Sequence record: PV654397.1
DNA length: 64,000 bases
Direction: 5' to 3' (one strand)
Shown: piece by piece, positions 43,592 through 64,000 of the stretch
Position numbering within the stretch: position 1 is the first letter of the stretch
How the letters are laid out: every line of letters starts with the position of its first letter
Program-made: the position numbers and the translations under genes
Notes under the pieces: model-generated
What the model was told of the DNA's origin: nothing
Databases searched by the model: none
Seen by the model: only the letters and a program-made list of their open reading frames with translations

Positions 43592-43752
43592 GGTGAATCT
43601 CCTAACTTTGTGGGCCGTCGCACCGTTGCCGCCCTACGAGATACATTATTGCAGTACTGATATACTTTGTCAATACTTTTTTATTAATAGTTTTAGTTCC
43701 ACCAGCAGATAGTTACTCACCGTTATTAACTATATATTTTGGATACACCTAT

Positions 43753-43814
43753 GCACCCTGTGGGCTAGTTTTTGTCTATGCGTATATAATAGCAAAGGGA
43801 CTGACCGGAGTCAA
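43753..43814 (-). ncRNA. ORF-less promoter + CTAGCCCACAGGGTGC element (copy 1), candidate sRNA
   Basis: TTGACT-N17-TATTAT with the -35 inside a terminator hairpin; motif at 43753-43768. Confidence 0.45.
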
Positions 43815-43826
43815 TCCCTTTTTTTA
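43795..43826. terminator. Repeated terminator hairpin GGGACTGAC-CGGA-GTCAATCCC (also at about 46055, 49334 and a variant at 53352)
   Basis: 9-bp stem with T-runs; identical copies directly after minus-strand gene stops. Confidence 0.75.
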
Positions 43827-43837
43827 TTCTTTTTTTG

Positions 43838-44038
43838 TTAGATGATTCTCCAATCATCAACGATCATGGTAAGATACCGAACCAGTGATTCGAGTGATTC
43901 GTGTTCTCGATAGTCTGCCGCTCCACCAGCGGTACAAGTACAGCCGATTAAGCCGTTTTGTAGTTCCTGGATCTTTACGTCGATCTGGTTGGCTTTAGCT
44001 TCTTTCAGTACTTCAACCAGGGCGATAGCGATAGACAT
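43838..44038 (-). CDS. Early-region hypothetical protein
   Basis: Cassette-driven ORF. Confidence 0.7.
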   Translation of the reverse strand: MSIAIALVEVLKEAKANQIDVKIQELQNGLIGCTCTAGGAADYREHESLESLVRYLTMIVDDWRII

Positions 44039-44128
44039 AATGTTTTACTCCAAACTATTGGCGGGAGAACTATTCCCCCGCTCTATGTAAAACATTATAC
44101 ATTACTGGTTAGTACTGTCAAATAGTTT

Positions 44129-44386
44129 TTATGAAATATCTTCGATGTAGTCGGCCCATTTCATTTTTTCAGTACTGTCAATGGCTACCGGATTATTTGG
44201 ATCAAACCATTCACCATCACCGCAATACATACCCACGGCTACGGTTTTATAGCCATCCTGGGCCGTACACCACGACATTGCACGATAGATATGGCCTTTA
44301 ACTGGTTGCAGTACTGGTAACGTTTTATGGTCTTCTACGTAGGCCATAGCTTGAGGATTTACCCGATATTGTGTGAACTGATCCAT
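44129..44386 (-). CDS. Early-region hypothetical protein
   Basis: Cassette-driven ORF. Confidence 0.7.
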   Translation of the reverse strand: MDQFTQYRVNPQAMAYVEDHKTLPVLQPVKGHIYRAMSWCTAQDGYKTVAVGMYCGDGEWFDPNNPVAIDSTEKMKWADYIEDIS

Positions 44387-44462
44387 TATGTTTCCCCTTG
44401 TAGTTAGTAAAGTTATTACATCAGTACTATCAAGCTATGTCAATAGTACTGAAATAAAACTT

Positions 44463-44687
44463 TTAGATTAGATTATTGAGGCCGTCAATGGTAGACTCAC
44501 TTTCTTCTTTCTCCCATTGTCGGTAGTACTTCCATGCTTCATGATAGGTGGCGATTAGTTCATCTTTTTGATCCTGGTTACATGCCAGTACTGAATCACG
44601 GTGAGCGGTGTTATAGATAGAATCGAATGATTTCTTCTCTTCTGCCAGGTTAGCTACTTCCCGCATCAGTTCATCAAAGTTAGCCAT
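44463..44687 (-). CDS. Early-region hypothetical protein
   Basis: Cassette-driven ORF. Confidence 0.7.
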   Translation of the reverse strand: MANFDELMREVANLAEEKKSFDSIYNTAHRDSVLACNQDQKDELIATYHEAWKYYRQWEKEESESTIDGLNNLI

Positions 44688-44754
44688 TTTATTACTCCTT
44701 TTAGTGGGGGAGGATATCTCCCCCTATGCAAAACATTATACTTTGTTTTAGTTA

Positions 44755-45018
44755 TTATGCAAGTACTTTTTTCATATAAACATTAAATTCTACACCGCCG
44801 TAACCTTCCACGATGATATGTTTTGCGTTATCACGTTTGCACATAGTGAAACCGTTGTTGATATGTTCTGCATTTTCCAGGGCGACATCACCGATAGCGG
44901 CACATACGGCACTAATAACAGTATTCCGCAAAGTACTGGTATCATTGGCGGTCATAGTAGTTTGCAGTACTACGTTGTCGTATACGTGTGCATTGATAGT
45001 GATTTCGATAGTGTTCAT
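44755..45018 (-). CDS. Early-region hypothetical protein
   Basis: Start trimmed to MNTIEI. Confidence 0.7.
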   Translation of the reverse strand: MNTIEITINAHVYDNVVLQTTMTANDTSTLRNTVISAVCAAIGDVALENAEHINNGFTMCKRDNAKHIIVEGYGGVEFNVYMKKVLA

Positions 45019-45105
45019 GGTGTATCTCCTGGACTTGAGGGGAAACCATTTCCCCCTCTCGATATAAAACATTATACGTTAATCTAACTACAATGCAAGT
45101 ACTTT

Positions 45106-45297
45106 TTAAATTTTATTTCCGATATAGTCCGGTCTATTCTTTTCGGTCATACGCTTTGCTAATGTCTGCATATGGCTTATAGCGTTCAAGGTGTCTTCCT
45201 CCAGGGATGAATCAAGATAATCAGGATCATTCTTCACCTTGCAATGATTATGATATCGTAGTACTGCCAGTACTTTTTTAACTTCTTCTACTGTCAT
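45106..45297 (-). CDS. Early-region hypothetical protein
   Basis: Coupled to the upstream ORF. Confidence 0.65.
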   Translation of the reverse strand: MTVEEVKKVLAVLRYHNHCKVKNDPDYLDSSLEEDTLNAISHMQTLAKRMTEKNRPDYIGNKI

Positions 45298-45566
45298 AAT
45301 AAGTACCCCACTTCGTTAGCTTTCAGGTTAGTATCAATCATCAGTGGATTTTTGTAGTTCACAAAACGATTAGTTTTTTCGATAGCAAATCCCATATAAT
45401 CCAGCTTACTAACAGTACATTCATTCTTAAAAACTTCTTTCGCTGCATCGATTGCTGATTGCATGGATAACCGACCATCTAAATTAATGTTTCCAAATGA
45501 TCCACCAGCAGAAGTAGGATTACCGTTCATATCTTTAATGATCATAGTAGCGGAGTAGCTAGACAT
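45294..45566 (-). CDS. Early-region hypothetical protein
   Basis: Cassette-driven ORF. Confidence 0.7.
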   Translation of the reverse strand: MSSYSATMIIKDMNGNPTSAGGSFGNINLDGRLSMQSAIDAAKEVFKNECTVSKLDYMGFAIEKTNRFVNYKNPLMIDTNLKANEVGYLL

Positions 45567-45650
45567 AATTTTGTTTCCTTTTAGTATCGGGGAGAACTAT
45601 TCTCCCCTTGATGTAAACTATTATACAGTACTGGTATACTTTGTCAATAC

Positions 45651-45872
45651 TTAATTACGGTTAAAATGATATGTGCCTTTATCATCCTGTACGCCCCATA
45701 CTGATTTACCATCAACACCAGTGAAGCCGGATTGTAATTCAATATGGAAACCATTATTATCAACTACAAAAACTTTTTTATTTTCATCCCGATAACATTG
45801 ATATTCTGAATCAACATTAAAGGCCGCATCATTCAGTAGATTGGAAGCGTAAATGCAAGTCATTGTAGTCAT
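45651..45872 (-). CDS. Early-region hypothetical protein
   Basis: Cassette-driven ORF. Confidence 0.7.
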   Translation of the reverse strand: MTTMTCIYASNLLNDAAFNVDSEYQCYRDENKKVFVVDNNGFHIELQSGFTGVDGKSVWGVQDDKGTYHFNRN

Positions 45873-46007
45873 GATTTTATTCCTTATTGCCAGGGAGAAC
45901 CGTTCCCCCTCTCGATATAAAACATTATACTTGATTCTAAGTACAATGCAAGTACTTTTTAAAAAATAGTTTTCAGTACTGAATACTTATATAATAGATA
46001 CACTTCC

Positions 46008-46074
46008 GCACCCTATGGGTCAGTGAGTTATCTCTCAATGGATATATAATAGCAAAGGGACTGACCGGAGTCAA
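46008..46074 (-). ncRNA. ORF-less promoter + CCCATAGGGTGC element (copy 2)
   Basis: Same architecture as copy 1. Confidence 0.45.
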
Positions 46075-46092
46075 TCCCTTTTTTAATCTTTT

Positions 46093-46677
46093 TTATCGTG
46101 TTACCTTACTTGCTGCCACATCACGCTTTTTATAGTACTGATTCCAGATATTGCTGGTTAAACCGTAATCAAGTACTTTAATAAGTCCATTACGATCCTG
46201 GCCGATATTCTGTTTTCTGATATCTCTTATCGTTAGTGTTGATAATGTATCATCAACGTGTTGTAGTGCATCAGCAAAGCGGTGCTGGCGTTCGATTGCA
46301 TTACGTTTAATATTGTACTTTAATTCATTGCACGCGTTTACGTGCTTCACACTGCCTTTGCTTGCAGTACTCAACCGATCCATAACGATAAACATATTAT
46401 CAGGATCGCATAAATGCATATGCACCTTTGCAAAGTACTGTTTCAACTGAGGGCGGTCATAGTCTAAAAAATTCCATACCTTACATTCAGTTTCATTTTG
46501 TTCTACACCCGCATCACAATTCGCGACCTTAATCACTAACCGATCATTTAAAGCGAATACTATACGGGAAGAACCAGCACCGATGATCTCCAGGCCAGCT
46601 AACCGACAAGCTGAAAGGATCTCTTTGTTGGTTTCCATTTCTGACAGTGTACGGATGAATTTAGTATAATTACGCAT
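46093..46677 (-). CDS. Ser/Thr protein kinase-like protein
   Basis: IGAGSSRIV glycine loop, VIKVA, QNETE helix C, FIVMDRL hinge, DIRKQNIG catalytic loop, VLDYG. Confidence 0.85.
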   Translation of the reverse strand: MRNYTKFIRTLSEMETNKEILSACRLAGLEIIGAGSSRIVFALNDRLVIKVANCDAGVEQNETECKVWNFLDYDRPQLKQYFAKVHMHLCDPDNMFIVMDRLSTASKGSVKHVNACNELKYNIKRNAIERQHRFADALQHVDDTLSTLTIRDIRKQNIGQDRNGLIKVLDYGLTSNIWNQYYKKRDVAASKVTR

Positions 46678-46708
46678 TGCATGTTCTCCTTGAGTTAATG
46701 AAACTATA

Positions 46709-46951
46709 TTACAGTACTTTACTATCAATGGCAACTACTTTTTTAACATTAACGGCGTGGATCACTTCCTTCGTGTTTTTAGTACTGAATACTTTCGCCG
46801 CTCCTTGTTCGACCGTGATACGATAGCGACCATTAACATCAACCATATTAATAAAGTCCGGCGTGCTGAATGGTGTTGTTTTACATTTGAGTACTGTTAA
46901 CAGTTCCACCAGCGATGTAGTTTCTTTGATACGTTTTTCTAAAGTAATCAT
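46709..46951 (-). CDS. Early-region hypothetical protein
   Basis: Start trimmed to MITLE; upstream module duplicated at 47227-47284. Confidence 0.7.
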   Translation of the reverse strand: MITLEKRIKETTSLVELLTVLKCKTTPFSTPDFINMVDVNGRYRITVEQGAAKVFSTKNTKEVIHAVNVKKVVAIDSKVL

Positions 46952-47008
46952 TTTGTTTCCCCCGTGTTGGTATGTACATATAGTACTAAAACATTTGAGT
47001 ACTGTCAA

Positions 47009-47227
47009 TTAGATAATATTATATTTCTTAAAATAAAATGCGTCTTGTGTTGGTTGATACTCGATACCGTTACCGTTATTGACTTCAACTAATAAACCTT
47101 TGTCAATTAGTTTTTTAATAGTACGATACCCTTGTTGAAAATTGGTAAAATGTGAATCATTACGAAAGGTATAACCGTGCTTAACTGCTTCATCAATAGT
47201 TTTCTTTTCGATTTTAGATAATTTCAT
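47009..47227 (-). CDS. Early-region hypothetical protein (possible winged-helix-like)
   Basis: Start trimmed to MKLSK; TIKKLIDKGLLVEV. Confidence 0.65.
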   Translation of the reverse strand: MKLSKIEKKTIDEAVKHGYTFRNDSHFTNFQQGYRTIKKLIDKGLLVEVNNGNGIEYQPTQDAFYFKKYNII

Positions 47228-47280
47228 TTTGTTTCTCCCGTGTTGGTATGTGTACATAGTACTAAAACAATTGAGTACTG

Positions 47281-47535
47281 TCAACGTGATATTAGTTTTA
47301 TTTTCTTATTGTATTGTTGATGCTCATAAAGGTTTATCTTTCCTGTGTTCTCGATTACTATCCTGTTGTTAGTGTCCACGTCGATTACACGCAGTTTCCC
47401 GTTGCTTAACTTCCTAGGTAATAGGTTACCATTAATAAACTCATTAGCAAGCTGTACGGCCTTTGTGATGATTCTCTGAGGTGCTTTATAGTGTACCCGT
47501 AAGATGTTATCTTTATATAGTTGAACCTTAATCAT
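47281..47535 (-). CDS. Early-region hypothetical protein
   Basis: ORF with RBS. Confidence 0.7.
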   Translation of the reverse strand: MIKVQLYKDNILRVHYKAPQRIITKAVQLANEFINGNLLPRKLSNGKLRVIDVDTNNRIVIENTGKINLYEHQQYNKKIKLISR

Positions 47536-47596
47536 TTTGTTTGTCCTATAAAAAAGGCGGGAACTGATCCCGCCGTGTTGTTAGTACTGCAAGTTA

Positions 47597-48001
47597 TTAG
47601 ATAACCTGGCGGCGTTTACTGTATACTGTTACACGATTACCCTTACGATCATGTCGGATCTCTTTCTGGTTGCGAATCAGTTCACTTGGACGCTTAAGGT
47701 TTGCCAGGTGATCCGCGTGAGTCCATGCGGTGTGGTTTACCTGTACTTTGATATCAGAATCAGCGATAAACTCATCTTGTGCGTCAAGTATTGCCGCCAG
47801 CATATCCGCTCGTTTTAGTTCTGCTGCTGTCAGTACTGGCTCAGGTGAATTCACAATATCAGAGATTTCTTTGAACTGTACGGCCCAGCGTTGACCTTTC
47901 GGTGCTGTCGTTCCCATGTCTTTAAATGCTGCTCCTTCCTCGCGTGCAACAATACGGGCAGCTTCACGGGTAGCGTAGAATTTAGTAATCATGGTATACA
48001 T
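47597..48001 (-). CDS. Early-region protein, paralog of 61283-61549
   Basis: Shared FxATRE.AR..AR..GA.FKDMG..G.RWA and DRKGNRVTVY. Confidence 0.8.
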   Translation of the reverse strand: MYTMITKFYATREAARIVAREEGAAFKDMGTTAPKGQRWAVQFKEISDIVNSPEPVLTAAELKRADMLAAILDAQDEFIADSDIKVQVNHTAWTHADHLANLKRPSELIRNQKEIRHDRKGNRVTVYSKRRQVI

Positions 48002-48087
48002 CCTATTAGTTAAGTTAGTACTACAAGTTAGAGTCTATTATAAAGTACTATCTGGGCAATGTCAAATAGTACTTTAAATGGATTCTA

Positions 48088-48411
48088 TTACATGTCTTTC
48101 TTACGTTTTACATCGTGGTAGCGAACTGTTATTTCTTTGTTGATCTCTTCCTCGATGCGGTGAATAACTTTTTCTTTCGGGTTGAAACCTATTACAGTTT
48201 CCTTAATGATTTCTAAACCCGTGTACTCGCCTTGTGTGCCGTAACCGTATGTAAAGGTTTCGTGTCCCAGGTCTTCCCAGCGATCACCAATCAATGCGGA
48301 CACGTAGCAGGAGTGGTAAGTATTGCCGTGGCTATCAGTCCACCGATTAACTTTAATGTCAAAGGAGGTTACAATTTTCAGTTCTACTTTCTGGGTAAGG
48401 ATCATAGCCAT
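48088..48411 (-). CDS. Early-region protein, paralog of 55287-55610
   Basis: Shared RWTDSxGNTYHSCxVS and FTYGY. Confidence 0.8.
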   Translation of the reverse strand: MAMILTQKVELKIVTSFDIKVNRWTDSHGNTYHSCYVSALIGDRWEDLGHETFTYGYGTQGEYTGLEIIKETVIGFNPKEKVIHRIEEEINKEITVRYHDVKRKKDM

Positions 48412-48498
48412 TTTTATTTCTCTCTCTTTGTTAGGAGGGGAACCATTCCCCTCGCTTGATGTAAACTATTATACAGTACTAAGATACTTTGTCAATAC

Positions 48499-48681
48499 TT
48501 ATTTTTTGGAAAGTTTACGCATTAATTCTACGCTTTCTTGTGAACGTTTTGCTACTTGACAAGCTGCATGGGCAGTAAACATTTTTGTATAGTCTGACGC
48601 TTTGCCACCGAACCGAGCGGCACGTTCACGGGCACTTGGAACTAATACGATTTCTTTCTTACAGATAGTGCACTTAGCCAT
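48499..48681 (-). CDS. Small putative Zn-binding protein
   Basis: CTIC...HAAC; start trimmed to MAKC. Confidence 0.65.
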   Translation of the reverse strand: MAKCTICKKEIVLVPSARERAARFGGKASDYTKMFTAHAACQVAKRSQESVELMRKLSKK

Positions 48682-48769
48682 TTTAATTTCTCTCTCTTTG
48701 TTAGGAGGGGAACCGTTTCCCCTCACTTGATGTAAACTATTATACAGTACTAAGATACTTTGTCAATAC

Positions 48770-49045
48770 TTAAGTATTGTAAATGTCGTGAATAGTGATA
48801 AAGTTTTTACGACCGTAAACATGTAAATCAGTATCAATGTAGTGCTTATCAAGTACATCCTCGACGCTTAAAGACGTGTCGTGAATATCTTCATAAAATT
48901 GTGGATCAACAATCGTGCTTAAGTCATCTGGCGTTAACTTATCGTTAAGACATTGAACCGCCTGGATATCTGCTTCACGTTTCCATTGTTCCAGATTAGT
49001 AGTCAGTACTTGCTCGATTTCGTTAGCTGTAAGTAAAGTCCGCAT
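48770..49045 (-). CDS. Early-region hypothetical protein
   Basis: Promoter-driven acidic ORF. Confidence 0.7.
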   Translation of the reverse strand: MRTLLTANEIEQVLTTNLEQWKREADIQAVQCLNDKLTPDDLSTIVDPQFYEDIHDTSLSVEDVLDKHYIDTDLHVYGRKNFITIHDIYNT

Positions 49046-49114
49046 TTTAATGTTTCCTTATCAGTGGTTGATGTAAGTATTATACTCGTTTAATTTCTAT
49101 TGTCAAACTATTTT

Positions 49115-49187
49115 ATCAGGGGAGTTTTTCGTATGTCTTACTCCTGGACTACTTAACGGGGTTACTTATTTCGTTCCCCGTCCTGAT
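49115..49187 (-). ncRNA. Candidate 73-nt three-way-junction small RNA (copy 1)
   Basis: Own TTGCAT-N16-TATAAT promoter; AUCAGG/CCUGAU closing stem, ACGGGG/CCCCGU and GGAGU/ACUCC hairpins; no ORF; second copy at 60606-60680. Confidence 0.55.
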
Positions 49188-49290
49188 GTAAAACATTATA
49201 CTTGATTCTAAGTACAATGCAAGTACTTTTTTAAAAATAGTTTTCAGTACTTGATAGTACTAGCCACCAGCAAACAATAGATACATTTAT

Positions 49291-49352
49291 GCACCCTGTG
49301 GGCTGATTTGTTTCTATGCGTATATAATAGCAAAGGGACTGACCGGAGTCAA
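49291..49352 (-). ncRNA. ORF-less promoter + CCCACAGGGTGC element (copy 3)
   Basis: Same architecture as copy 1. Confidence 0.45.
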
Positions 49353-49516
49353 TCCCTTTTTCAAATATTTTTAAACTTCTTTCGGGTTGCGATATGTGAT
49401 AGCGTTCGGGTACATTTGTTTAATGTTATTCCATGCCTGGTTAACATTATAACCACTTGATCGAATCAGTTGGTTATTACCGACACCTTGAAACACTACT
49501 TCAAATAAGAATTCTT

Positions 49517-49690
49517 TCATGCTTTCACCTCTCGATCTGCTTTGCCTTTACGCCAGGCTGTTGCTAATTGTTCGCGTTGCCATAAGTCGAGTGATACGTA
49601 AAGTTTTGCATTATCACCCTTCGGATATTCGCCAGTAGTACCAATCCGATAAAACAGATCTTTCAGTACTGTTAATTCTACCTGGACCAT
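49517..49690 (-). CDS. Early-region hypothetical protein
   Basis: Start trimmed to MVQVEL. Confidence 0.65.
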   Translation of the reverse strand: MVQVELTVLKDLFYRIGTTGEYPKGDNAKLYVSLDLWQREQLATAWRKGKADREVKA

Positions 49691-49776
49691 TATACTTTCC
49701 TCTTTGTTCGGAGGGGAACTATTCCCCTTCCGATATAAAACATTATACACTTTATTCAGTACTGTGCAAGTACTTT

Positions 49777-49989
49777 TTAATCTTTCAGCCAATGATCCTG
49801 AATGAATTTTTCACCGGAACCTTGCTGCATTGATTGTAACAGACGTTCGCGATGAGCGGCGGCGAATTGCTCAGTACTATGCGTTACACCTGGTTGATAT
49901 CTGGATTCACCATTTGGGGCGATGTATTGTACATCCCACGGTTTTTCGTTAGTATCAGACCATTTACGAACGATTAGTTGACCTTGCAT
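49777..49989 (-). CDS. Early-region hypothetical protein
   Basis: Cassette-driven ORF. Confidence 0.7.
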   Translation of the reverse strand: MQGQLIVRKWSDTNEKPWDVQYIAPNGESRYQPGVTHSTEQFAAAHRERLLQSMQQGSGEKFIQDHWLKD

Positions 49990-50062
49990 TTTTCTTTCCT
50001 CTTAGTGGGGAGAATCATTTCTCCCCTTCATGTAAACTATTATACAGTACTGGATTGCATTG

Positions 50063-50359
50063 TCAATATTTTATTACTTCTTCGTATAATTTATCTAGTA
50101 CTTCGTATATTTCATTTAATGCACTTGATTTAAAAGCTGATAAGCTATACCCTTCATCTTTTAAAAATTTAATAAATTCAGTTGATGACGTGAATCCGAT
50201 CGTTTCATGTGGGAATGAAAAATCAAACGTTCCTTGCATTACGCATTTAAATTCATCAGGTGAAAACGTGTTACCTTTTTCCCGTCGCATAGTGAAAAAT
50301 GTAACACCTGGAATAAACTTAAGCTGTTCCCGTGATTCAACTTCAATAACTGTTTTCAT
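50063..50359 (-). CDS. Early-region hypothetical protein
   Basis: Cassette-driven ORF. Confidence 0.7.
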   Translation of the reverse strand: MKTVIEVESREQLKFIPGVTFFTMRREKGNTFSPDEFKCVMQGTFDFSFPHETIGFTSSTEFIKFLKDEGYSLSAFKSSALNEIYEVLDKLYEEVIKY

Positions 50360-50442
50360 ATATTACCTCTTAGTGGGGAGAATCATTTCTCCCCTTCATG
50401 TAAACTATTATACAGTACTATAATCTATTGTCAAATACTTTT

Positions 50443-50631
50443 TTACAGTTTATGAATTAATTCTTTATCTAAGCGATAGCGTACATTATTAATGGTAACA
50501 GCATTATTTTTAATGCTACGCTGTACGGGTCCACCAGCAATAACAAACGTTGCTTTATTGCCCCGAACAATGATAGCACTTCCAGGATTACCGAAATCAT
50601 CTTGTACTAAAATACTTGATAAGTTTTCCAT
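50443..50631 (-). CDS. Early-region hypothetical protein
   Basis: Cassette-driven ORF. Confidence 0.65.
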   Translation of the reverse strand: MENLSSILVQDDFGNPGSAIIVRGNKATFVIAGGPVQRSIKNNAVTINNVRYRLDKELIHKL

Positions 50632-50711
50632 TTTTTTATTTCCTCTTAGTAGGGGAAGATGTTTCCCCTTGATGCAAGTACTATAACAGTACTGAAAACT
50701 AAATGCAAGTA

Positions 50712-51068
50712 CTATGATAAAATCATGATAGGATATTCACTATCTATCAATACCTCGAATCCGAAACCTTCGTACCATTCTTTAAGATTAAAGGCGTTAT
50801 CTTCTCCCGTATCGCATTCTAAGATGATACAATCTGAATCATCTGCGGCATCAATAAAGGCATTCATTAATTCGTTACCTTCACCATTGCCCCGACTATC
50901 AGGATCAACATAAAGAGAATCAATAAACGCTACACGGTCATAATCAAGATCCGGTGCAATGATTCCACGTTTAACAAACCAGTACTGCAATTGTGCTACT
51001 TTGCCCTGTACCTGATAACCAGTGATCTCGCCATTGTCAGTAGTACGCGTGATATGTTGTATTCCCAT
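50712..51068 (-). CDS. GNAT-family acetyltransferase
   Basis: IDSLYVDPDSRGNGEG acetyl-CoA motif A; LKEWYEGFGFE motif B. Confidence 0.85.
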   Translation of the reverse strand: MGIQHITRTTDNGEITGYQVQGKVAQLQYWFVKRGIIAPDLDYDRVAFIDSLYVDPDSRGNGEGNELMNAFIDAADDSDCIILECDTGEDNAFNLKEWYEGFGFEVLIDSEYPIMILS

Positions 51069-56632: not shown

Positions 56633-56653
56633 AGTGATTCAGTACTTTAATTG

Positions 56654-57136: not shown

Positions 57137-57341
57137 TTTATAAATCCTCAATTAAAGTTTAGTTTACGTTTATTAGTGTATCAAAGTTTTCTCGACGTGT
57201 CCAGTTTTTCGTTCGACTTACTGGCGGTCTACTTAGTGCTCCCCGTCTTGATGTAATACATTCTACGCTTTTCTGTGGTAATGTCAACTACTTTCTTAAA
57301 ACTATTTTCAAAGTATCTCAGTACTACGATACTACAAAAAC

Positions 57342-57363
57342 AAAAAAGCCCACCAGGTGGGCT
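57342..57363 (-). terminator. Rho-independent terminator
   Basis: AGCCCACCAGGTGGGCT palindrome plus T6. Confidence 0.7.
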
Positions 57364-57369
57364 ATGTAC

Positions 57370-57600
57370 TTAATCAGTGAGTAAAATATTAAACACTTTA
57401 CCATTTAACGTTATTGGTGCACTGCTACCAGGCTCAAGATCCGTTAATATACCTGCAATCGCTTTATCATTGGCGACCTTTCCAGTGTCCAACAGTACTA
57501 CAGTACTGATAAGATTAACGCTCGTTTCAATATCATAATGCACGGCGTTAAGTAGTTGTGTAGTACTGCTTTCGTTAAGTAAAACAATTCGCTTAGTCAT
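57370..57600 (-). CDS. Early-region hypothetical protein
   Basis: ORF. Confidence 0.65.
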   Translation of the reverse strand: MTKRIVLLNESSTTQLLNAVHYDIETSVNLISTVVLLDTGKVANDKAIAGILTDLEPGSSAPITLNGKVFNILLTD

Positions 57601-57621
57601 GATGTTACCCCGTAGTATCTA

Positions 57622-57921
57622 TCAACGGCAATTAATAACGCCGGTATGCGTTACTTTCTCAGTATCCATTACAGTGACCGAACCGCGTTTAGTACTGGCA
57701 TCATAATAAATTGTTGTGCTACCGTTTTCGTCTTCTTCATGGAACGGGCCGTTTTTAAATGCTTCCGGCTGGATCTCTAAATCCTTTAATACAATCTCGC
57801 CAGTTCTTTCATCGGTCATTGCAACAGTGCACTGAATGAATTTTTCACTACTTACATCTAATGACGCATTAACAGCGAAAGAGGAAACAGATAAAGCCAG
57901 GGCGATGATTGCAATTTTCAT
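57622..57921 (-). CDS. Exported/periplasmic protein
   Basis: Sec signal peptide MKIAIIALALSVSSFAVNA; two Cys. Confidence 0.75.
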   Translation of the reverse strand: MKIAIIALALSVSSFAVNASLDVSSEKFIQCTVAMTDERTGEIVLKDLEIQPEAFKNGPFHEEDENGSTTIYYDASTKRGSVTVMDTEKVTHTGVINCR

Positions 57922-58005
57922 TTGATTATCCTTAGTTACCAGGGGGAACCGCTCCCCCTTGCGATGTAAAATATTATACAGTACTAAAAACTATTATCAA
58001 GTACT

Positions 58006-58242
58006 TTATGATTTTTTATAAAACATTTCAGCCGTGATATTTTTACCCGTTGGTTGTACTTTATCCAGAATTTTTTGATGCCCAGGCCGTCCAAATGAAT
58101 ATGATCCGTAAACCGTAAACCAGTAGTTACCCTCAGTGTTTACATGTACAGCACAATAGGGTACACCCCGCGATTCATCACTAGTAAAGTGTACTACCGT
58201 TCCCGTTACATTCGCAGACGTTGATTTGATTTGTTCAAGCAT
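58006..58242 (-). CDS. Early-region hypothetical protein
   Basis: Cassette-driven ORF. Confidence 0.7.
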   Translation of the reverse strand: MLEQIKSTSANVTGTVVHFTSDESRGVPYCAVHVNTEGNYWFTVYGSYSFGRPGHQKILDKVQPTGKNITAEMFYKKS

Positions 58243-58351
58243 TTTCTTATTCCTTAGTTACCAGGGGAACCGCTCCCCCTATGCAAAACATTATACGCGT
58301 TTAAAAACTAATTGCAAGTATTTTAATAAAAAGTATTTGAAAAAATAGTTG

Positions 58352-58481
58352 TTGACAAGTGCATCCAGTACTGGCATAATTACTACATCAAGACGAAACA
58401 GTCACTAACCCACCGGGTGCCGAGATCCGTCTATTAAATGATTCAGTACTGAAAAAGTAACGGGGAGTTATTATCTCCCCG
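58352..58481 (+). ncRNA. Plus-strand promoter + CTAACCCACCGGGTGC element (copy 6), about 100-nt candidate sRNA
   Basis: TTGACA(58352)-N17-CATAAT; motif 58405-58420; hairpin CGGGGAG/CTCCCCG at 58461-58481; no ORF. Confidence 0.5.
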
Positions 58482-58486
58482 CGTTG

Positions 58487-58708
58487 TTATTTTGTAAGGT
58501 ATAAACAGAAGTCACCTTTATTTGCTACGCCGCCAGTGTAACGCGAGGAATAGTTAGAAACGTCCTGGACTTCTGCTATTACCAGGGTATCATCATTCAA
58601 TTCGTCGCAGAAGCAAACGGCTGGATCTTGTACGCCGATTTTGTCAGCATGTTCCCGCATAGATTTAACCAGTGCTTCCAGTTGGGAAAGAGTAGTGATA
58701 TTAGCCAT
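58487..58708 (-). CDS. Early-region hypothetical protein
   Basis: Start trimmed to MANIT. Confidence 0.7.
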   Translation of the reverse strand: MANITTLSQLEALVKSMREHADKIGVQDPAVCFCDELNDDTLVIAEVQDVSNYSSRYTGGVANKGDFCLYLTK

Positions 58709-58792
58709 TGTATTTTCCTCATTACCAGGGAGAACCATTTCTCCCTTTGATGTAAACCATTATACAGTACTGAAAACTAATTGCAAGTACTT

Positions 58793-58981
58793 TTAATTAA
58801 ATTCCATAAAATCATTTTCAACGTGCACAACAATCTGATTATTTTTAAAGGACGCAGAAAACTCTATACAATCATAAACCGCTTTTTCTGTTACCAGACT
58901 ATGAGCACCAATCGGATTAATTGGGGATTGAATTGTTTCAATCTCGTTACCTTGTTCATTAACGATTAAAATATTAAACAT
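58793..58981 (-). CDS. Early-region hypothetical protein
   Basis: Promoter-driven ORF. Confidence 0.6.
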   Translation of the reverse strand: MFNILIVNEQGNEIETIQSPINPIGAHSLVTEKAVYDCIEFSASFKNNQIVVHVENDFMEFN

Positions 58982-59020
58982 TGCCGTTACTCCTGGATAG
59001 TGTTAACTCGATATAAAGTA

Positions 59021-59203
59021 TTATACGCCTTTATTGCTTAGTGTCCAGTGATCACGCATCATACGCCCCGCACGATCCCAGCTAGTAGGCATGGGTATGC
59101 CTTGCAATTCGTTAGGGGAGATCTCGACCTCGATCCCTACATCAATAACAGTCATTCCAGCTTTCGCAGCTTGCTCGCGGATAACCTCAGATAATGTTGT
59201 CAT
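59021..59203 (-). CDS. Early-region hypothetical protein
   Basis: Promoter-driven ORF; upstream module duplicated at 58990-59020 and 59212-59250. Confidence 0.6.
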   Translation of the reverse strand: MTTLSEVIREQAAKAGMTVIDVGIEVEISPNELQGIPMPTSWDRAGRMMRDHWTLSNKGV

Positions 59204-59277
59204 GATTAAAGCTCCTGGATAGTGTTAACTCGATATAAAGTATTATACAGTACTGAAAACTAATTGCAAGTACTTTT

Positions 59278-59538
59278 TCAATATTGTTTGTCGTCGTCTT
59301 CCTCGATGAATTGACCGACGAAATGATCTACTTTCGCTTTGAGGCTTTTATAATCTTCTTCTACTTCCTTTAAACGTTCCTGGTAGTATTCCAGTGCTTG
59401 AATATACGCCGCCTCAGCAGTTTTTGCACGCATAGCTAAATTCATTCCACGCGTTTCATCAAATAGCCAATAACCATCGGTGCAATGACTGATAGATAAT
59501 GATTTACTTAGTGCTGTATAGCTAATTACTTTACTCAT
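59278..59538 (-). CDS. Early-region hypothetical protein
   Basis: Cassette-driven ORF with C-terminal coiled coil. Confidence 0.7.
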   Translation of the reverse strand: MSKVISYTALSKSLSISHCTDGYWLFDETRGMNLAMRAKTAEAAYIQALEYYQERLKEVEEDYKSLKAKVDHFVGQFIEEDDDKQY

Positions 59539-59595
59539 TAGATAACCCTCAGTAAAGGCGGGAACTATTACCCGCCATTATCTCAGTACTGAATA

Positions 59596-59835
59596 TTACA
59601 TTCCAACCATTGCAGCACGGATCGCAGTAGTGCTATACTTAAAGCCGTCCGGCGTTGTAGTAGTACCGTTGGCTTTTAATCTGCGGTACATACATTCCGC
59701 AGCAATATCTTTAGTTCTACTTTGTGCGATGCAACTTTGAGCAAGCCGATACAATGACTCACCGTTATTAATCCAAAGGCTTACATTCCAATGAGTTTTG
59801 TTTTTGTGACCGTTGTAAGTTTTAGTACTAGCCAT
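59596..59835 (-). CDS. Early-region protein, paralog of 61638-61877
   Basis: GHKNKTHWNVSLWINN...TPDGFKYSTTAIRAAMVGM. Confidence 0.8.
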   Translation of the reverse strand: MASTKTYNGHKNKTHWNVSLWINNGESLYRLAQSCIAQSRTKDIAAECMYRRLKANGTTTTPDGFKYSTTAIRAAMVGM

Positions 59836-59925
59836 TTTTAAATCCTCGTTTGAGCGGGGAACCACTCCCCGCCTCGATATAAAGTATTATACGCTTTTAA
59901 ACTTAGTTTGCAAGTACTTTTTAAA

Positions 59926-60537
59926 TTAATATTCGATTGATTCCACTACGCCATCAATAACATTGAATTGATACTCGTTACCCTCAATCAGTGCCGTAAT
60001 GTTTTCAGTAGTGAATTGATCCTCATATGCATTCTCTAAATCACGGTACAACTTGCGGGACAATTCACGAATAGTTTCAGTGAGTAGTTCCTCAAGCTCA
60101 TTAACTAACGTTTCTTGTTTTGCGGTTAAATCAGTGTAAGCCGATTCAATGTACCCGCTTACCGTGTTTTCGTGTGCGTAGCGAGAGTGTGAACGTTCTA
60201 CACTCATTGCCAAATCATCTTCATTCAACAAGTGACGGATAGAACGATATTTCGTTAACGCTTTAATCTTGCGTAAAAACTTCACTGCGTCCACGCTGTC
60301 AGTACTGATTGATGCACCGTCACCCTGGGACCAAAAACCGCTGAATTGTATTTCAGCTTCATTAATGCCATATTCCGGTAGTACTGTTTCTTTATAGTAT
60401 TCAATTTCACTTTCAGAAAAATAATTGTCGTTTGAGTTTTTTTCACGTTCCCGAACCAGTTCGATAGCTGACGTTTGTTGTTCTGCGTTCAATTCAGAAA
60501 AAGCCATAACATAAGTAGTAGTAGTGATAGTTTTCAT
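59926..60537 (-). CDS. Acidic phage hypothetical protein
   Basis: 203 aa, FSGFWSQGDGAS motif. Confidence 0.8.
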   Translation of the reverse strand: MKTITTTTYVMAFSELNAEQQTSAIELVREREKNSNDNYFSESEIEYYKETVLPEYGINEAEIQFSGFWSQGDGASISTDSVDAVKFLRKIKALTKYRSIRHLLNEDDLAMSVERSHSRYAHENTVSGYIESAYTDLTAKQETLVNELEELLTETIRELSRKLYRDLENAYEDQFTTENITALIEGNEYQFNVIDGVVESIEY

Positions 60538-60605
60538 TTTGTAACCCTCATTCAGTAGTTGATGTAAGTATTATACGCTTTTAAAAACATTTGTCAAACT
60601 ATTTT

Positions 60606-60680
60606 ATCAGGGGAGTTTTTCGTGTGCCTTACTCCTGGGCTACTTAACGGGAAGTTACTTATTTCGTTCCCCGTCCTGAT
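60606..60680 (-). ncRNA. Candidate three-way-junction small RNA (copy 2, 75 nt)
   Basis: Near-identical to 49115-49187 with stems preserved; own promoter. Confidence 0.55.
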
Positions 60681-60761
60681 GTAAAACATTATACGCCTTT
60701 AAACATAGTTTGCAAGTACTTTTTAAAAATAGTTTTCAGTACTGAATATTAAAAAAAAGTA

Positions 60762-60934
60762 TTGACAGCATTATCAAGTACTGGCATAATATACCCCATG
60801 ACAACAGCTAACCCACCGGGTGCACAATTGTAACTATACTAAACTAATTTTGCTATAGATACACTCCCGCACCCTATGGGCTACGGCTTATCTGCCAATG
60901 AATACATTATGCCAGTACTGACAAAATAAGTCAA
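60762..60934. promoter_or_regulatory. Convergent promoter pair, each followed by the CCCANNGGGTGC element (copies 7 and 8)
   Basis: + TTGACA(60762)-N17-CATAAT, motif 60808-60823; - TTGACT(60934)-N17-CATAAT, motif 60869-60884. Confidence 0.65.
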
Positions 60935-60964
60935 TACCGGCAATTGTAAAGATTTGTAAACTGC

Positions 60965-61195
60965 TTATACTGCAATCGCGTCCAGGCTGTAATAATAATA
61001 AGTGCCGTATTGGTGTACTTTATTACCTTTTATTTCAGTACTGAATGAATCCGAACGATTTGCATATGATGTTAATTTAAAGTACTTTGATTTGCTGATA
61101 CGTTGCCATACACCACAGATCCGCTGTAAGTAAGTAGTTTTATTCGTGGTAGTATCTTTTACGGTTTTAACTTCAGTCATATACATATTAGTCAT
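60965..61195 (-). CDS. Early-region hypothetical protein
   Basis: Cassette-driven ORF. Confidence 0.7.
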   Translation of the reverse strand: MTNMYMTEVKTVKDTTTNKTTYLQRICGVWQRISKSKYFKLTSYANRSDSFSTEIKGNKVHQYGTYYYYSLDAIAV

Positions 61196-61282
61196 TTTTA
61201 TTACTCCAGGTTATAGGCGGGAAGTGTTCCCGCTCTCGATGTAAAACATTATACGCCATTAAACATAGTTTGCAAGTACTTT

Positions 61283-61549
61283 TTATTCAAGTACTGCAAT
61301 CTTTTTTGTACGGTACACGGTCACGCGGTTGCCCTTTCGGTCGAGCTTTATTTCTACCACTCGACGCGATACACTATCGGGACTTTTTAAGGCCGCTAAC
61401 CAGTACTGTAATGATCTGGCGGTACTACGCTTTACAATGGCCCAACGTTTACCACGTTCCGATTGTACGCCCATATCTTTAAACGTTGCCCCGTCCTGGC
61501 GTGCGGCGATCCGAGCTTGTTCACGCGTCGCAAAATACTTAATATTCAT
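61283..61549 (-). CDS. Early-region protein, paralog of 47597-48001
   Basis: FATREQARIAARQDGATFKDMG...DRKGNRVTVY. Confidence 0.8.
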   Translation of the reverse strand: MNIKYFATREQARIAARQDGATFKDMGVQSERGKRWAIVKRSTARSLQYWLAALKSPDSVSRRVVEIKLDRKGNRVTVYRTKKIAVLE

Positions 61550-61637
61550 GCTGTTGCCCTTATCGTTGGTGTATGAATAAAACACTATTATAAAGTACTA
61601 TCCCCGTGCAATAGTACTTTAAATAAATTCTATTCTA

Positions 61638-61877
61638 TTACATTCCAACCATCGCCGCACGGATCGCAGTAGTGCTATATTTGAATCCGTCCGGTGTTTT
61701 ATCTTGTCCAGTCTGTTCTAAAAATAACATCATATGACGGGCCGCATCATTGCGATTAGTGTTGTCGTTAATAAAATCCAGGGCCAACCGATACAATCCC
61801 TCATCGTTATTAATCCACAGGCTTACATTCCAATGAGTTTTGTTTTTGTGACCTAAGAACATTTTTGATTTAGCCAT
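61638..61877 (-). CDS. Early-region protein, paralog of 59596-59835
   Basis: GHKNKTHWNVSLWINN...TPDGFKYSTTAIRAAMVGM. Confidence 0.8.
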   Translation of the reverse strand: MAKSKMFLGHKNKTHWNVSLWINNDEGLYRLALDFINDNTNRNDAARHMMLFLEQTGQDKTPDGFKYSTTAIRAAMVGM

Positions 61878-61970
61878 TTTTTTAATCCTCTTATATAGTG
61901 GGGAACTATTCCCCACCTGATGTAAAACATTATACGCTTTTAAACATAGTTTGCAAGTACTTTATTAAAC

Positions 61971-62333
61971 TTATTTGTAAATTTTGCCACTGTCAGCCCA
62001 TACCAGGAAACGAGGCATATTATCCCATGCATCTTGTTTTAAGTTTAAGCCGTGCAATTCCTCAGTTGTTGCCATCCCTGGTACTGGCTTACTACACACC
62101 GCGAAATTTTCGCCCATATACTGATAAACCATCGTCAAATCATTTGAGATCATTATATGGATCATTGAATCCAGCATCAAAGTAGCGGCGTATTGTTCAC
62201 GCTTAAGCGGCAACATTGCAATAAGTTCCCGATAAGCTGCAATGTGAATTTTTACCGTTTCAGCCGGAAGACCTTTCATCTCATCGCGGAAGTTTACCAG
62301 GTTAAGCATGATTTTATTGATTTGAGTCGCCAT
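61971..62333 (-). CDS. Early-region hypothetical protein
   Basis: Start trimmed to MATQI. Confidence 0.75.
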   Translation of the reverse strand: MATQINKIMLNLVNFRDEMKGLPAETVKIHIAAYRELIAMLPLKREQYAATLMLDSMIHIMISNDLTMVYQYMGENFAVCSKPVPGMATTEELHGLNLKQDAWDNMPRFLVWADSGKIYK

Positions 62334-62643
62334 CGTTTTAATCTCTCTTAATGTGTAGCGGGAAGTGTTCCCGCTCTCGATGTAAAACATTATACGCTTT
62401 TATCAGTACGGTGCAAGTACTTTCTACAAATACTTTTAAAATAGTTTTCTTTCTATATAGGAGTACTATTATTCAGTACTGAATCAATCCACCAAATCAT
62501 CCCTATACCCCGTAAAACGGCCTCAGACGCATTCTAACGCATTAATACACCTAAGCTATACATTTGCACCACTCCCAACAATCCAGGGCGTTACGGGCCG
62601 TTTAAACGCGTTAAATTATTTTCAATTATTTTGTTTTTAGGTA

Positions 62644-62945
62644 TTGACTTGATCCTGAAAAAGCGTATAATTACTACATAGACGCGAGAAAGCGGAAACC
62701 CCAGAGGGTGCGGAATTACGCCCAAAATTCAAGATATAAAAAAAGGATACACTCCCGCACCCTAGCAGGTAAACGCACTTTCTCAGTACTGAAATATAGT
62801 ACCATAGTCCGGCCCAGGATAGCAAGCAAATTAATTAAAACTTTTTTGCTTCCAGGGTATTGCTTTATTTTTTCAGTACTGTATAATAGTTCCATCAAGT
62901 CGAGAAAGACTCAAGCCCACCGGGTGCATAGTTACGCCCAAAATT
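62644..62945 (+). promoter_or_regulatory. Two plus-strand promoters each followed by a CCC.NNGGGTGC element and TTACGCCCAAAAT, with an inverted degenerate element between (copies 9-11)
   Basis: TTGACT(62644)-N16-TATAAT, motif 62696-62711; TTGCTT(62860)-N16-TATAAT, motif 62913-62927; inverted copy 62757-62769. Confidence 0.6.
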
Positions 62946-63107
62946 CAGTACTGAAAAAATTTTTAAAAATATCCGTCCAGGTCGTTGACATTGCCCCCAG
63001 TTTATAAGATAATGATTCCAGATTCAGAAAAATCTAACTCCAGATACTGCGGGGAAACTATCCCCACGCGGTAGGGGAACTATTGGAAAAACAAAATAAA
63101 ATTTTGA

Positions 63108-63280
63108 TTTAGCCGTCTATACTTCCAGACGTGTAACCATCTAGCCGTTTAGCCATCCAGCCATCCAGAAATCTAGCCGTTTAGCCGTCTAGATGGATAG
63201 CCATCTTTACTTCCAGACTTCTGGAGGGCTAGACATATCTACGCCCAAAATCCATCCAGGGTAACTACACCCAAAATCCG
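63108..63280. repeat. Short iteron-like repeats in non-coding DNA
   Basis: 7x AGCCRTY within 63110-63206, 2x TACTTCCAGAC, TACRCCCAAAAT at about 63240 and 63266. Confidence 0.7.
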
Positions 63281-64000
63281 TCAGTACTATACCATAGATC
63301 TATCTTTTGAAAGGGAGTATTCAGTACTGCCATCATAGCCCTCACTATGTTACCCTAGGAGGATGAAGACTATCATGTAGTACTGAATACTGTTAGAGGG
63401 AATCCACCAGCTTGTGCTGGTGGCATAATGCTTTAGATTAAAATCAGTACTGATACCATTCTGTTAATATCAGTACTGTTATTACGATTTTCATATGAGG
63501 TTCAAAAAGATGTACCACCACAGGAGGAACTATCTTTTCTGTACTGTCTCACGACAGGAGGTAGAGTAAATGAATTGTTCGCAGCAACTCATCACCCTAT
63601 GTAGAACATTATACAGTACTGAATCATAAAGTCAATAACTTTCTTTCATCTTTCAGTACTGATATTCTTGAGAACTACCCGACTACAAACATCATTATAT
63701 CCCACAAATCATAAACGTCCCAACGTAAATTTCAACTTTCGAAGATCCAACTTTTATTTCATAGGTACTCCAAAATTTTTAGGATCGAGATTTAGGATGG
63801 AGTACTAACCAACTTTTTGCTGGAGCCTCAAGGGGTAATTGAATTTTACCCCGAAGGGTAAAGGGGTAATTGAAATTAAGGTGAAAGTAATAATTCAGTA
63901 CTAATCATTGCGTGATTACTTTTGATTACATTTGATGTAATTTGCAAAATGGAAAAGGAGCTTGGAAACTACAAAGTACGGCAGACTTCCTCTGCCTACT

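What the first reader, a model, noticed from the sequence alone, without database searches (positions are those of the whole stretch)
43699..63423. Eleven Chi sites concentrated in the early/terminal region, with polarity and inverted pairs
Seen: CCACCAGC on + (Chi on the minus strand) at 43699, 43923, 45502, 46906, 49264, 50531, 51994, 56517 and 63404; GCTGGTGG on + at 56579 and 63416. About 0.2 would be expected by chance in 21 kb, and I found only one (3183) in the left 42 kb. Six are intergenic and two form inverted pairs. Established: RecBCD recognises Chi when arriving from its 3' side, then stops degrading and loads RecA, and Chi also limits CRISPR spacer acquisition. Inference: the phage mimics host self DNA at its ends. 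The minus-strand sites would face an end at the about 42-kb side (the other copy of a terminal repeat) and the plus-strand sites would face an end beyond 64 kb.
Basis: partly seen in the sequence, partly recalled or inferred. Interest (0 to 1): 0.75.

Follow-up and report, generated by a model that had tools for sequence, protein, structure and literature searches.

The report
Chi-site cluster in jumbo-phage terminal repeat
The 21.7-kb repeat at each end of this giant E. coli virus holds eleven copies of Chi, the 8-letter signal that switches the host's DNA-end-degrading enzyme RecBCD to repair, oriented toward the DNA ends; related giant viruses of other gut bacteria share this, so the virus probably uses the host enzyme to save or join its ends.

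Summary

- **Source.** The window is the last 64 kb of Escherichia phage WPEC5, a 381-kb Asteriusvirus.
- **Location.** Eleven of the 12 Chi lie in window 42339-64000. That stretch is exactly the right copy of a 21,662-bp direct terminal repeat (DTR), and window 64000 is the physical right terminus.
- **Excess.** 11 observed against 0.24-1.3 expected. Chi ranks first of 168 same-composition octamers.
- **Orientation.** Nine Chi face the left terminus and two face the right one. Seven of the 11 are intergenic, against 1 of 26 elsewhere in the genome.
- **Recurrence.** The same cluster occurs at mostly non-homologous positions in five or six lineages of RaK2-like jumbo phages of enteric hosts. 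It is absent from a Pseudomonas relative.

Most likely the cluster makes host RecBCD, on entering a phage end, switch inside the repeat from degradation to RecA loading. That would save the end and drive repeat-by-repeat recombination, as proposed for P1 and the lambdoid phage LLS. The function is inferred, not shown. The searched library holds no paper describing this for these phages. I rate it a new variant of a known kind.

The parts
42339..64000 (.). Right copy of the 21,662-bp direct terminal repeat (DTR) of phage WPEC5. Window 64000 is the right physical terminus. The left boundary corresponds to the left physical terminus in the other copy.
   Evidence: Identical to record 1-21662. The first and last 60 nt are identical to the DTRs of fEgEco12, G17 and vB_Ec-M-J. 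The fEgEco12 termini were shown by PhageTerm and restriction digests.
43699..43706 (-). Chi 1, the first Chi met from the left terminus, 1,361 bp in. It is intergenic and lies upstream of a TTGACA promoter box.
43923..43930 (-). Chi 2, inside a 66-aa ORF, in frame GCT|GGT|GG (Ala-Gly-Gly).
45502..45509 (-). Chi 3, inside a 90-aa ORF, in the Ala-Gly-Gly frame.
46906..46913 (-). Chi 4, inside an 80-99-aa ORF, in frame G|CTG|GTG|G (Leu-Val).
49264..49271 (-). Chi 5, effectively intergenic; only a 29-aa annotated mini-ORF covers it.
50531..50538 (-). Chi 6, inside a 62-aa ORF, in the Ala-Gly-Gly frame.
51994..52001 (-). Chi 7, intergenic. Its 3' half forms part of a 10-bp hairpin stem.
56517..56524 (-). 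Chi 8, intergenic. It is the left member of an inverted pair with a 54-nt spacer.
56579..56586 (+). Chi 9, intergenic. It faces the right terminus, 7,414 bp away.
63404..63423 (.). Palindromic Chi pair, CCACCAGC-N4-GCTGGTGG (Chi 10 on the minus strand, Chi 11 on the plus strand). Chi 11 is the first Chi met from the right terminus, 577 bp in. The pair is conserved in Asteriusvirus and in the Kae01/Munch lineage, with varying loop and flanks.
44094..60597 (-). Span holding twelve perfect TTGACA-16/17-TATAAT promoters, all on the minus strand. They drive about 70 small genes toward the left terminus, which marks a host-RNA-polymerase early region.

Best explanation
The terminal repeat of this virulent jumbo phage has been selected to carry a dense, end-facing set of host Chi sites.

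**Proposed steps (inferred).**
1. When the linear genome, or a cut concatemer end, is exposed in E. coli, RecBCD loads on the end and unwinds and degrades inward.
2. Within 0.6-1.4 kb it meets a correctly oriented Chi. From the left end it meets nine chances in 21 kb.
3. At Chi it stops destroying the 3' strand and loads RecA.
4. Because this happens inside the repeat, the RecA filament has a homologous partner in the other repeat copy. The end is saved and the two repeats recombine, giving a circle or a concatemer junction.

**Shown here:** the sites, their excess, their restriction to the repeat, their orientation toward mapped termini, and their recurrence in related phages.

**Inferred:** that RecBCD acts on these ends, and that the outcome is recombination rather than protection alone.
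For: - **Excess.** 11 Chi against 0.24-1.3 expected; first of 168 composition-matched octamers; exact octamer 11 against 5 for all 24 one-off neighbours.
- **Confined to the repeat.** 0.51 per kb against 0.077 per kb elsewhere, and none in the 5 kb flanking the repeat on either side.
- **Non-coding bias.** 7 of 11 are non-coding in the repeat against 1 of 26 outside (Fisher p=2e-4). Outside the repeat, Chi is mostly Ala-Gly-Gly codons and largely explained by codon usage.
- **Orientation.** Nine Chi face the left terminus (first at 1,361 bp) and two face the right (577 bp and 7.4 kb). The termini are identical to experimentally mapped ones.
- **Position.** Across three lineages with mapped termini, sites sit nearer the end they face (Mann-Whitney p=0.003).
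- **Recurrence.** Clusters of 6-14 Chi against 0.2-0.6 expected occur in 11 genomes of Asteriusvirus, Kae01/Munch, Mimasvirus, Eneladusvirus and Alcyoneusvirus. Positions are non-alignable between lineages, apart from the terminal Chi pair shared by Asteriusvirus and Kae01/Munch and one GAP32-Yen9-03 site.
- **Host match.** The Pseudomonas relative PA5oct, with a 39-kb repeat of similar G+C, has no enteric Chi in its repeat and one in 287 kb.
- **Not host DNA.** No match in 5,426 E. coli genomes.
- **Precedent.** P1 and LLS have Chi clustered near their ends, and their growth is aided by RecBCD.
- **No inhibitor found.** No lambda Gam or Mu Gam homologue was found.
Against: - No functional data exist for any of these phages.
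- The phage has its own RecA/UvsX-like recombinase. It therefore breaks the 'no Rec module, many Chi' rule of the lambdoid phages and may not need host recombination.
- Individual sites are not clearly more conserved than background: 9 of 11 against 0.63 within the genus (p=0.17), and CBB-GAP32 p=0.01-0.12.
- The 9:2 strand ratio is close to what the G-rich coding strand predicts.
- Only two sites guard the right end.
- An injected end-protecting protein or an unrecognised RecBCD inhibitor among the roughly 70 unknown early proteins cannot be excluded.
- PA5oct shows no cluster of the reported Pseudomonas Chi, so the strategy is not universal in the wider clade.
Confidence: 0.55

Rival explanations
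1. Protection only. The Chi cluster merely halts RecBCD degradation of the entering or cut end, and so also limits RecBCD-fed CRISPR spacer acquisition. Host RecA recombination plays no needed role. Joining and replication are done by the phage's own UvsX-like machinery.
For: The geometry is the same as for the best explanation. The phage encodes a RecA/UvsX-like protein. The repeat is an immediate-early region with twelve consensus host promoters, so it is exposed before any phage protein exists.
Against: This does not explain why the sites are confined to the repeat rather than simply near the ends. In the P1 and LLS studies the benefit was attributed to recombination, and simple 'protection' is disputed.
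Confidence: 0.22
2. Late-stage role. The sites protect or recombine ends made during replication or packaging, such as the unpackaged side of a terminase cut at a repeat boundary, rolling-circle tails, or forks collapsing near an origin at the inner repeat edge. Under this reading they do not act on the injected genome.
For: Terminase cuts at repeat boundaries would expose exactly these sequences. Iteron-like repeats lie in the last 1.6 kb of the repeat. Minus-strand Chi at 1-21 kb and plus-strand Chi at 28-39 kb converge on about 21-27 kb.
Against: The plus-strand group lies in RCC1-like paralogues as Ala-Gly-Gly codons. The rest of the genome follows gene orientation, not a replichore pattern. 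Nothing shows an origin there.
Confidence: 0.12
3. No Chi function. The excess is a by-product of composition, codon usage, strand bias or hitch-hiking, or the octamer serves another factor such as a hairpin, a terminator or a protein site.
For: Outside the repeat the excess is largely codon usage. Some sites overlap hairpin stems. The strand ratio matches the composition.
Against: Chi ranks first of 168 same-composition octamers in all 11 genomes. The exact octamer far outnumbers its neighbours. The contexts differ. Sites recur at non-homologous positions in several lineages and are absent in the Pseudomonas relative. Seven of 11 are non-coding.
Confidence: 0.06

Closest known systems
Phage P1 and relatives (P7, D6): Chi enriched toward the terminally redundant ends
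   Same: About one Chi per 1.9-2.0 kb in the end regions. Chi is the top octamer and is frequent in non-coding DNA. The proposed role is RecBCD-RecA recombination of terminal repeats after injection.
   Different: P1 is temperate, about 95 kb, and packaged by headful from pac, so its redundancy is variable and its sites lie on both strands over tens of kb. Here the phage is virulent and 360 kb, the repeat is exact with fixed ends, the cluster stops at the repeat boundaries, and the phage has its own RecA-like gene.
Lambdoid phage LLS and the 'no Rec module, many Chi' class (Zheng et al., Genome Res 2025)
   Same: Terminal clustering and strong bias to the orientation that is active for the nearby end (20 of 23 in LLS). 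The excess goes beyond codon usage.
   Different: LLS has cos ends, lacks recombinase genes and has RecBCD-enhanced growth shown experimentally. WPEC5 has a recombinase gene, its dependence on RecBCD is untested, and most of its sites are intergenic.
Phage T5 terminal repeat (first-step-transfer DNA)
   Same: A long exact terminal repeat full of small pre-early genes that are transcribed toward the terminus from host promoters.
   Different: T5 has only two Chi per 10.2-kb repeat, and both face away from the end that enters first.
Chi in the E. coli chromosome
   Same: The same octamer, recognised by the same enzyme, and orientation-dependent.
   Different: In E. coli it occurs about once per 4.6 kb, is overwhelmingly within ORFs and is attributed largely to codon usage. 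In the repeat it occurs once per 2.0 kb in 38% G+C DNA and is mostly non-coding.

Membership tests
Enterobacterial Chi sites (RecBCD recognition sequence) | Exact octamer 5'-GCTGGTGG-3' | tested here: met
   12 exact matches in the window, 11 of them in the terminal repeat.
Enterobacterial Chi sites (RecBCD recognition sequence) | Orientation such that RecBCD coming from a double-strand end approaches the 3' side of the octamer | tested here: met
   Nine sites face the left terminus and two face the right terminus. The termini are identical to mapped ones.
Enterobacterial Chi sites (RecBCD recognition sequence) | The host's RecBCD recognises this octamer | tested here: met
   The host in the record is E. 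coli. The relatives' hosts are enteric bacteria. All enteric species tested use this Chi, according to the paper read.
Enterobacterial Chi sites (RecBCD recognition sequence) | Chi-dependent attenuation of the nuclease and stimulation of recombination on this DNA | not testable with these tools
   This needs RecBCD assays or genetics.
Chi-enriched phages that exploit RecBCD (P1 / LLS class) | Chi strongly over-represented and clustered near the genome ends in the active orientation | tested here: met
Chi-enriched phages that exploit RecBCD (P1 / LLS class) | [quoted passage not shown] | tested here: not met
   CAGTACTG (430 copies) and related words are far more frequent. Chi ranks first only among the repeat's octamers scored against a Markov order-5 expectation, and among its composition-matched permutations.
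Chi-enriched phages that exploit RecBCD (P1 / LLS class) | No phage recombinase and no RecBCD inhibitor | tested here: not met
   A 389-aa RecA/UvsX-like ORF scores above the Pfam cut-off. No Gam or Mu-Gam was found. Other inhibitor types were not tested.
Chi-enriched phages that exploit RecBCD (P1 / LLS class) | Growth aided by host RecBCD/RecA | not testable with these tools
   No such data were found for any Asteriusvirus.
T5-like first-step-transfer terminal repeat | Exact long terminal repeat carrying host-promoter-driven small early genes | tested here: met
T5-like first-step-transfer terminal repeat | Two-step DNA entry with the repeat entering first | not testable with these tools
   This needs interrupted-infection experiments.

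The most novel reading that the evidence does not exclude
The whole RaK2-like clade of enteric jumbo phages uses its 20-kb terminal repeat as a cis-acting trap for RecBCD that needs no inhibitor. A graded array of end-facing Chi sites is kept up by turnover. A conserved palindromic Chi pair about 0.5 kb from one terminus works in both directions, and because Chi and its complement are adjacent it leaves a hairpin-capped 3' tail. This would let the phage survive RecBCD before any gene is expressed, start joining of the repeats, and avoid triggering host systems that sense RecBCD inhibition.
Probability: 0.15. Interest if true: 0.75.

Novelty: new variant of a known kind. Interest (0 to 1): 0.6.

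Why it matters
How giant linear phage genomes survive the first minutes in a cell with active RecBCD, and how their exact terminal repeats are joined, is unknown for this clade.

A DNA-encoded answer that matches the host and recurs across five genera would extend the Chi-exploitation idea. So far that idea rests on temperate P1 and the lambdoid phages. This case would carry it to virulent jumbo phages that have their own recombinase.

It also gives a clean test system: eleven defined sites, mapped ends and a laboratory host.

Finally, it offers a sequence signature, clusters of the host's own Chi, for predicting the termini, the early regions and the host clade of uncultured large phages.

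Tried and rejected
- **Own genome.** No whole genome is held for the window. I used the public record instead. The stretch masked as N at window 26392-26441 was re-masked in my working copy and was neither read nor reported.
- **Reads to map termini.** Only metagenome contigs of relatives hold the stretch, and contigs cannot show ends.
- **Site-by-site conservation as a test of selection.** It was not significant within Asteriusvirus, whose genomes are 93-97% identical. It was marginal for CBB against GAP32.
- **Host-cognate switch in the Pseudomonas relative PA5oct.** Enteric Chi is absent, as predicted, but the reported Pseudomonas Chi is not clustered either.
- **Polarity set by a replication origin.** Rejected, because orientation outside the repeat follows gene strand and Ala-Gly-Gly codons.
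- **Repeat family or host-derived DNA.** Rejected.
- **T5 as a parallel.** Weak.
- **RecBCD inhibitors.** Searches for Gam and Mu-Gam were negative. Ten repeat proteins gave only unknown PHROG families, a GNAT acetyltransferase and a weak kinase hit. A T4 gp2-type end protector was not searched for.
- **Genome-wide selection for Chi outside the repeat.** There is only weak residual signal after a dicodon control (p=0.004; p=0.09 without the RCC1-like block).
Full report
**What the window is.** The window matches Escherichia phage WPEC5 at 100% identity (PV654397.1; 381,326 bp; host E. coli; genus Asteriusvirus by its close relatives). It is the last 64 kb of that record, so window position equals record position minus 317,326. 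Record 1-21662 is identical, base for base, to window 42339-64000. The genome therefore ends in a 21,662-bp direct terminal repeat (DTR), and the window holds the right copy.

The first and last 60 nt of this repeat are identical to those of the repeats of fEgEco12, G17 and vB_Ec-M-J. For fEgEco12 the termini were determined with PhageTerm and confirmed by restriction digests (PMC13070987). A 20,668-bp repeat was also reported for Sharanji (PMC11895373). Window base 64000 is thus the right physical terminus. Window base 42339 corresponds to the left physical terminus in the other copy.

**The observation.** All twelve octamers are at the stated places, and 0 of 100 shuffles reach twelve. Eleven lie in the repeat.
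- Expectation there is 0.24, 0.49 and 1.29 under Markov orders 1, 3 and 5. At order 5 Chi is the most over-represented of 11,792 octamers.
- It is first of the 168 permutations of its own letters, whose mean is 0.38.
- The 24 one-letter variants together occur five times.
- The flanks of the eleven sites are unrelated, so this is not a dispersed repeat.
- The repeat has no megablast match in 5,426 complete E. coli genomes, so it is not captured host DNA.

**Whole-genome view.** The unique genome (359,664 bp) has 37 Chi. Eleven are in the repeat, which is 6% of the length (0.51 per kb). The other 26 are in the remaining 338 kb (0.077 per kb).

Outside the repeat, 25 of 26 lie in ORFs. Most are on the coding strand in the frame GCT|GGT|GG, that is Ala-Gly-Gly. 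Six of them sit in a block of RCC1/ATS1-like paralogues at record 26.7-44.9 kb. With a dicodon control the remaining excess is weak: 19 of 27 Ala-Gly-Gly against a background of 0.41 gives p=0.004, and p=0.09 without the paralogue block.

Inside the repeat only four octamers lie in credible ORFs and seven are effectively non-coding. The contrast is 7 of 11 against 1 of 26 (Fisher p=2e-4). The repeat cluster is therefore a separate phenomenon from the genome-wide codon effect. No Chi lies in the 5 kb flanking the repeat on either side.

**Anatomy and orientation.** The repeat carries about 70 small genes, all on the minus strand, and twelve perfect TTGACA-16/17-TATAAT promoters, all on that strand. 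The other 338 kb hold 17 such promoters. This marks a host-polymerase early region transcribed toward the left terminus, as in the first-step-transfer repeat of T5.

RecBCD recognises 5'-GCTGGTGG-3' when it comes from the 3' side of the octamer. A top-strand Chi therefore serves an enzyme entering from the right end, and a bottom-strand Chi serves one entering from the left.
- The nine minus-strand sites face the left terminus, the first at 1,361 bp.
- The two plus-strand sites face the right terminus, at 577 bp and 7,414 bp.
- If 30% of encounters are productive (a textbook-range figure from my own knowledge), nine sites leave about 4% escape and two sites about 49%.
- Across the three lineages with mapped termini, bottom-strand sites sit nearer the left end (mean relative position 0.375, n=28) and top-strand sites nearer the right end (0.74, n=6). 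The Mann-Whitney test gives p=0.003.

One caution applies. The coding strand is G-rich, so the strand-specific expectation already favours the minus strand about 2.5 to 1. The 9:2 ratio by itself is not strong evidence.

**The palindromic pair.** Sites 63404 and 63416 form CCACCAGC-N4-GCTGGTGG, an 8-bp hairpin (-9.7 kcal/mol, z=-3.5). It lies 577-587 bp from the right repeat boundary in four Asteriusvirus genomes and 483 bp from it in Klebsiella phage fENko-Kae01 and Salmonella phage Munch. Loops differ (ttgt, acaa, ttaa) and so do the flanks. It is one of only two places where Chi aligns with Chi between lineages; the other is a single GAP32-Yen9-03 site.
- In the right copy, its plus-strand Chi is the first guard of the right terminus.
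- In the left copy, its minus-strand Chi is the last one before unique DNA.

**Relatives.** Eleven genomes show the same thing: a roughly 20-kb stretch with 6-14 Chi against 0.2-0.6 expected. The majority are co-oriented with the early genes and promoters, and Chi ranks first of the 168 permutations in every case. The genomes are:
- WPEC5, G17, fEgEco12, vB_Ec-M-J and SP27
- fENko-Kae01 and Munch
- CBB and GAP32
- fHe-Yen9-03
- RaK2

Where termini are annotated, the cluster lies in the repeat. In fENko-Kae01, 14 of 32 Chi lie in 5.8% of the genome. In CBB, 9 of 29 lie in 6.3%.

Between lineages the repeats share almost no alignable DNA apart from short intergenic repeat units, and their Chi sites are at different places. 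Within a genus the sites are conserved, but not significantly more than background. The picture is one of many redundant sites with turnover and a maintained density.

Pseudomonas phage PA5oct is a distant relative with a 39-kb repeat of 36.5% G+C. It has no enteric Chi in the repeat and one in 287 kb. This argues against ancestry or composition as the cause. It also has only one copy of the reported Pseudomonas Chi in its repeat, so the strategy is not universal.

**Gene content bearing on the mechanism.** WPEC5 has a 389-aa RecA/UvsX-like ORF. Sharanji is annotated with a recombinase A and exonuclease subunits. No lambda Gam or Mu Gam homologue was found. Ten of the larger repeat proteins are of unknown function, apart from a GNAT acetyltransferase and a weak kinase-like hit.

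**Explanation.** I take the cluster to be a selected, cis-acting device that turns RecBCD at the phage ends from nuclease into RecA loader while it is still inside the repeat. The repeat is the only part of a single infecting genome that has a homologous partner. The result would be survival of the end and repeat-by-repeat strand invasion, giving a circle or a concatemer junction with one repeat. This is the model proposed for P1 and for LLS.

The sites, their excess, their confinement, their orientation and their recurrence are shown. The action of RecBCD and the recombination outcome are inferred. The rivals are protection without host recombination, a late role at packaging or replication ends, and no Chi function. 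They are listed with their tests.

**Novelty.** Full-text searches were run combining Chi or RecBCD with jumbo phages, Asteriusvirus, terminal repeats, RaK2, GAP32, CBB, PBECO4 or 121Q. They found no description of this cluster. The concept itself is known from P1 and the lambdoid phages. What differs here:
- a virulent 360-kb phage
- an exact repeat with fixed ends that bounds the cluster
- mostly intergenic sites
- a conserved bidirectional Chi palindrome
- a phage recombinase gene present alongside many Chi, contrary to the lambdoid rule

I rate it a new variant of a known kind.

**Limits.** No reads of this phage were available to map ends directly. Which end enters first is unknown. The N run at window 26392-26441 was left masked and was not examined.

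Noticed in passing
whole window; densest at window 60001-64000: The palindrome CAGTACTG (usually TCAGTACTGA) is the most over-represented octamer of the genome. It has 430 copies in 360 kb against about 11 expected at Markov order 1. The window holds 59, of which 37 are in the repeat and 14 in its last 4 kb. It is probably an operator or promoter-associated motif of the intergenic repeat units.
   Followed up: partly
window 62400-64000: The last 1.6 kb of the terminal repeat is essentially non-coding and full of short repeats. There are five TAGCCRTC-type units at 63110-63218 with 8/24/32-nt spacing, and four TACGCCCAAAAT units. These could be an origin or a packaging signal. The Chi palindrome lies among them.
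   Followed up: partly
window 46054-46081, 49332-49359, 53349-53376 (minus strand): There are three copies of a 12-bp-stem hairpin whose stem contains a TTGACT -35 box and which is followed by TATTAT. This looks like a promoter embedded in a hairpin.
   Followed up: no
window 63404-63423 compared with L037/L033 (G17, fEgEco12): The 4-nt loop of the Chi palindrome is ttgt in WPEC5 and vB_Ec-M-J but acaa in G17 and fEgEco12. The hairpin is therefore inverted between strains.
   Followed up: partly
window 40793-42241 and record 21965-26565 (L001, L022): Tandem arrays of tightly packed, often overlapping ORFs of 60-75 aa flank the terminal repeat on both sides, on the minus strand. They have strong negative AT skew (about -0.2 at window 36-42 kb) and hold no Chi.
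   Followed up: no
record 26672-44893 (L022), outside the window: This is a block of about 15 paralogous RCC1/ATS1-like ('chromosome condensation regulator') genes on the plus strand. It holds six plus-strand Chi as Ala-Gly-Gly codons, three of them spaced 255-258 bp apart within one gene.
   Followed up: partly
window 3183-3190 (+): This is the single Chi outside the repeat in the window. It abuts an AAAAAAAAGTTTGAC box and overlaps the -35-like hexamer of a promoter-like site downstream of a C/G hairpin.
   Followed up: no
window 42000-44000: G+C steps from about 0.33-0.35 to 0.38-0.40 at the repeat boundary, so the repeat is the most G+C-rich part of the window.
   Followed up: no
alignment column 11983 of the five Asteriusvirus repeats (WPEC5 record about 10.1 kb): A site is caught in flux. 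It reads CCACCAGC (Chi) in fEgEco12, CCCCCAGC in WPEC5 and CCATCAGC in vB_Ec-M-J. Conversely, the plus-strand Chi at window 56579 reads GCTAGTGG in G17.
   Followed up: partly
L055 (phage T5, AY543070): T5 has 2 Chi in its 10.2-kb terminal repeat and 4 in the other 101 kb. Both repeat sites face the right end, not the left end that enters first.
   Followed up: partly
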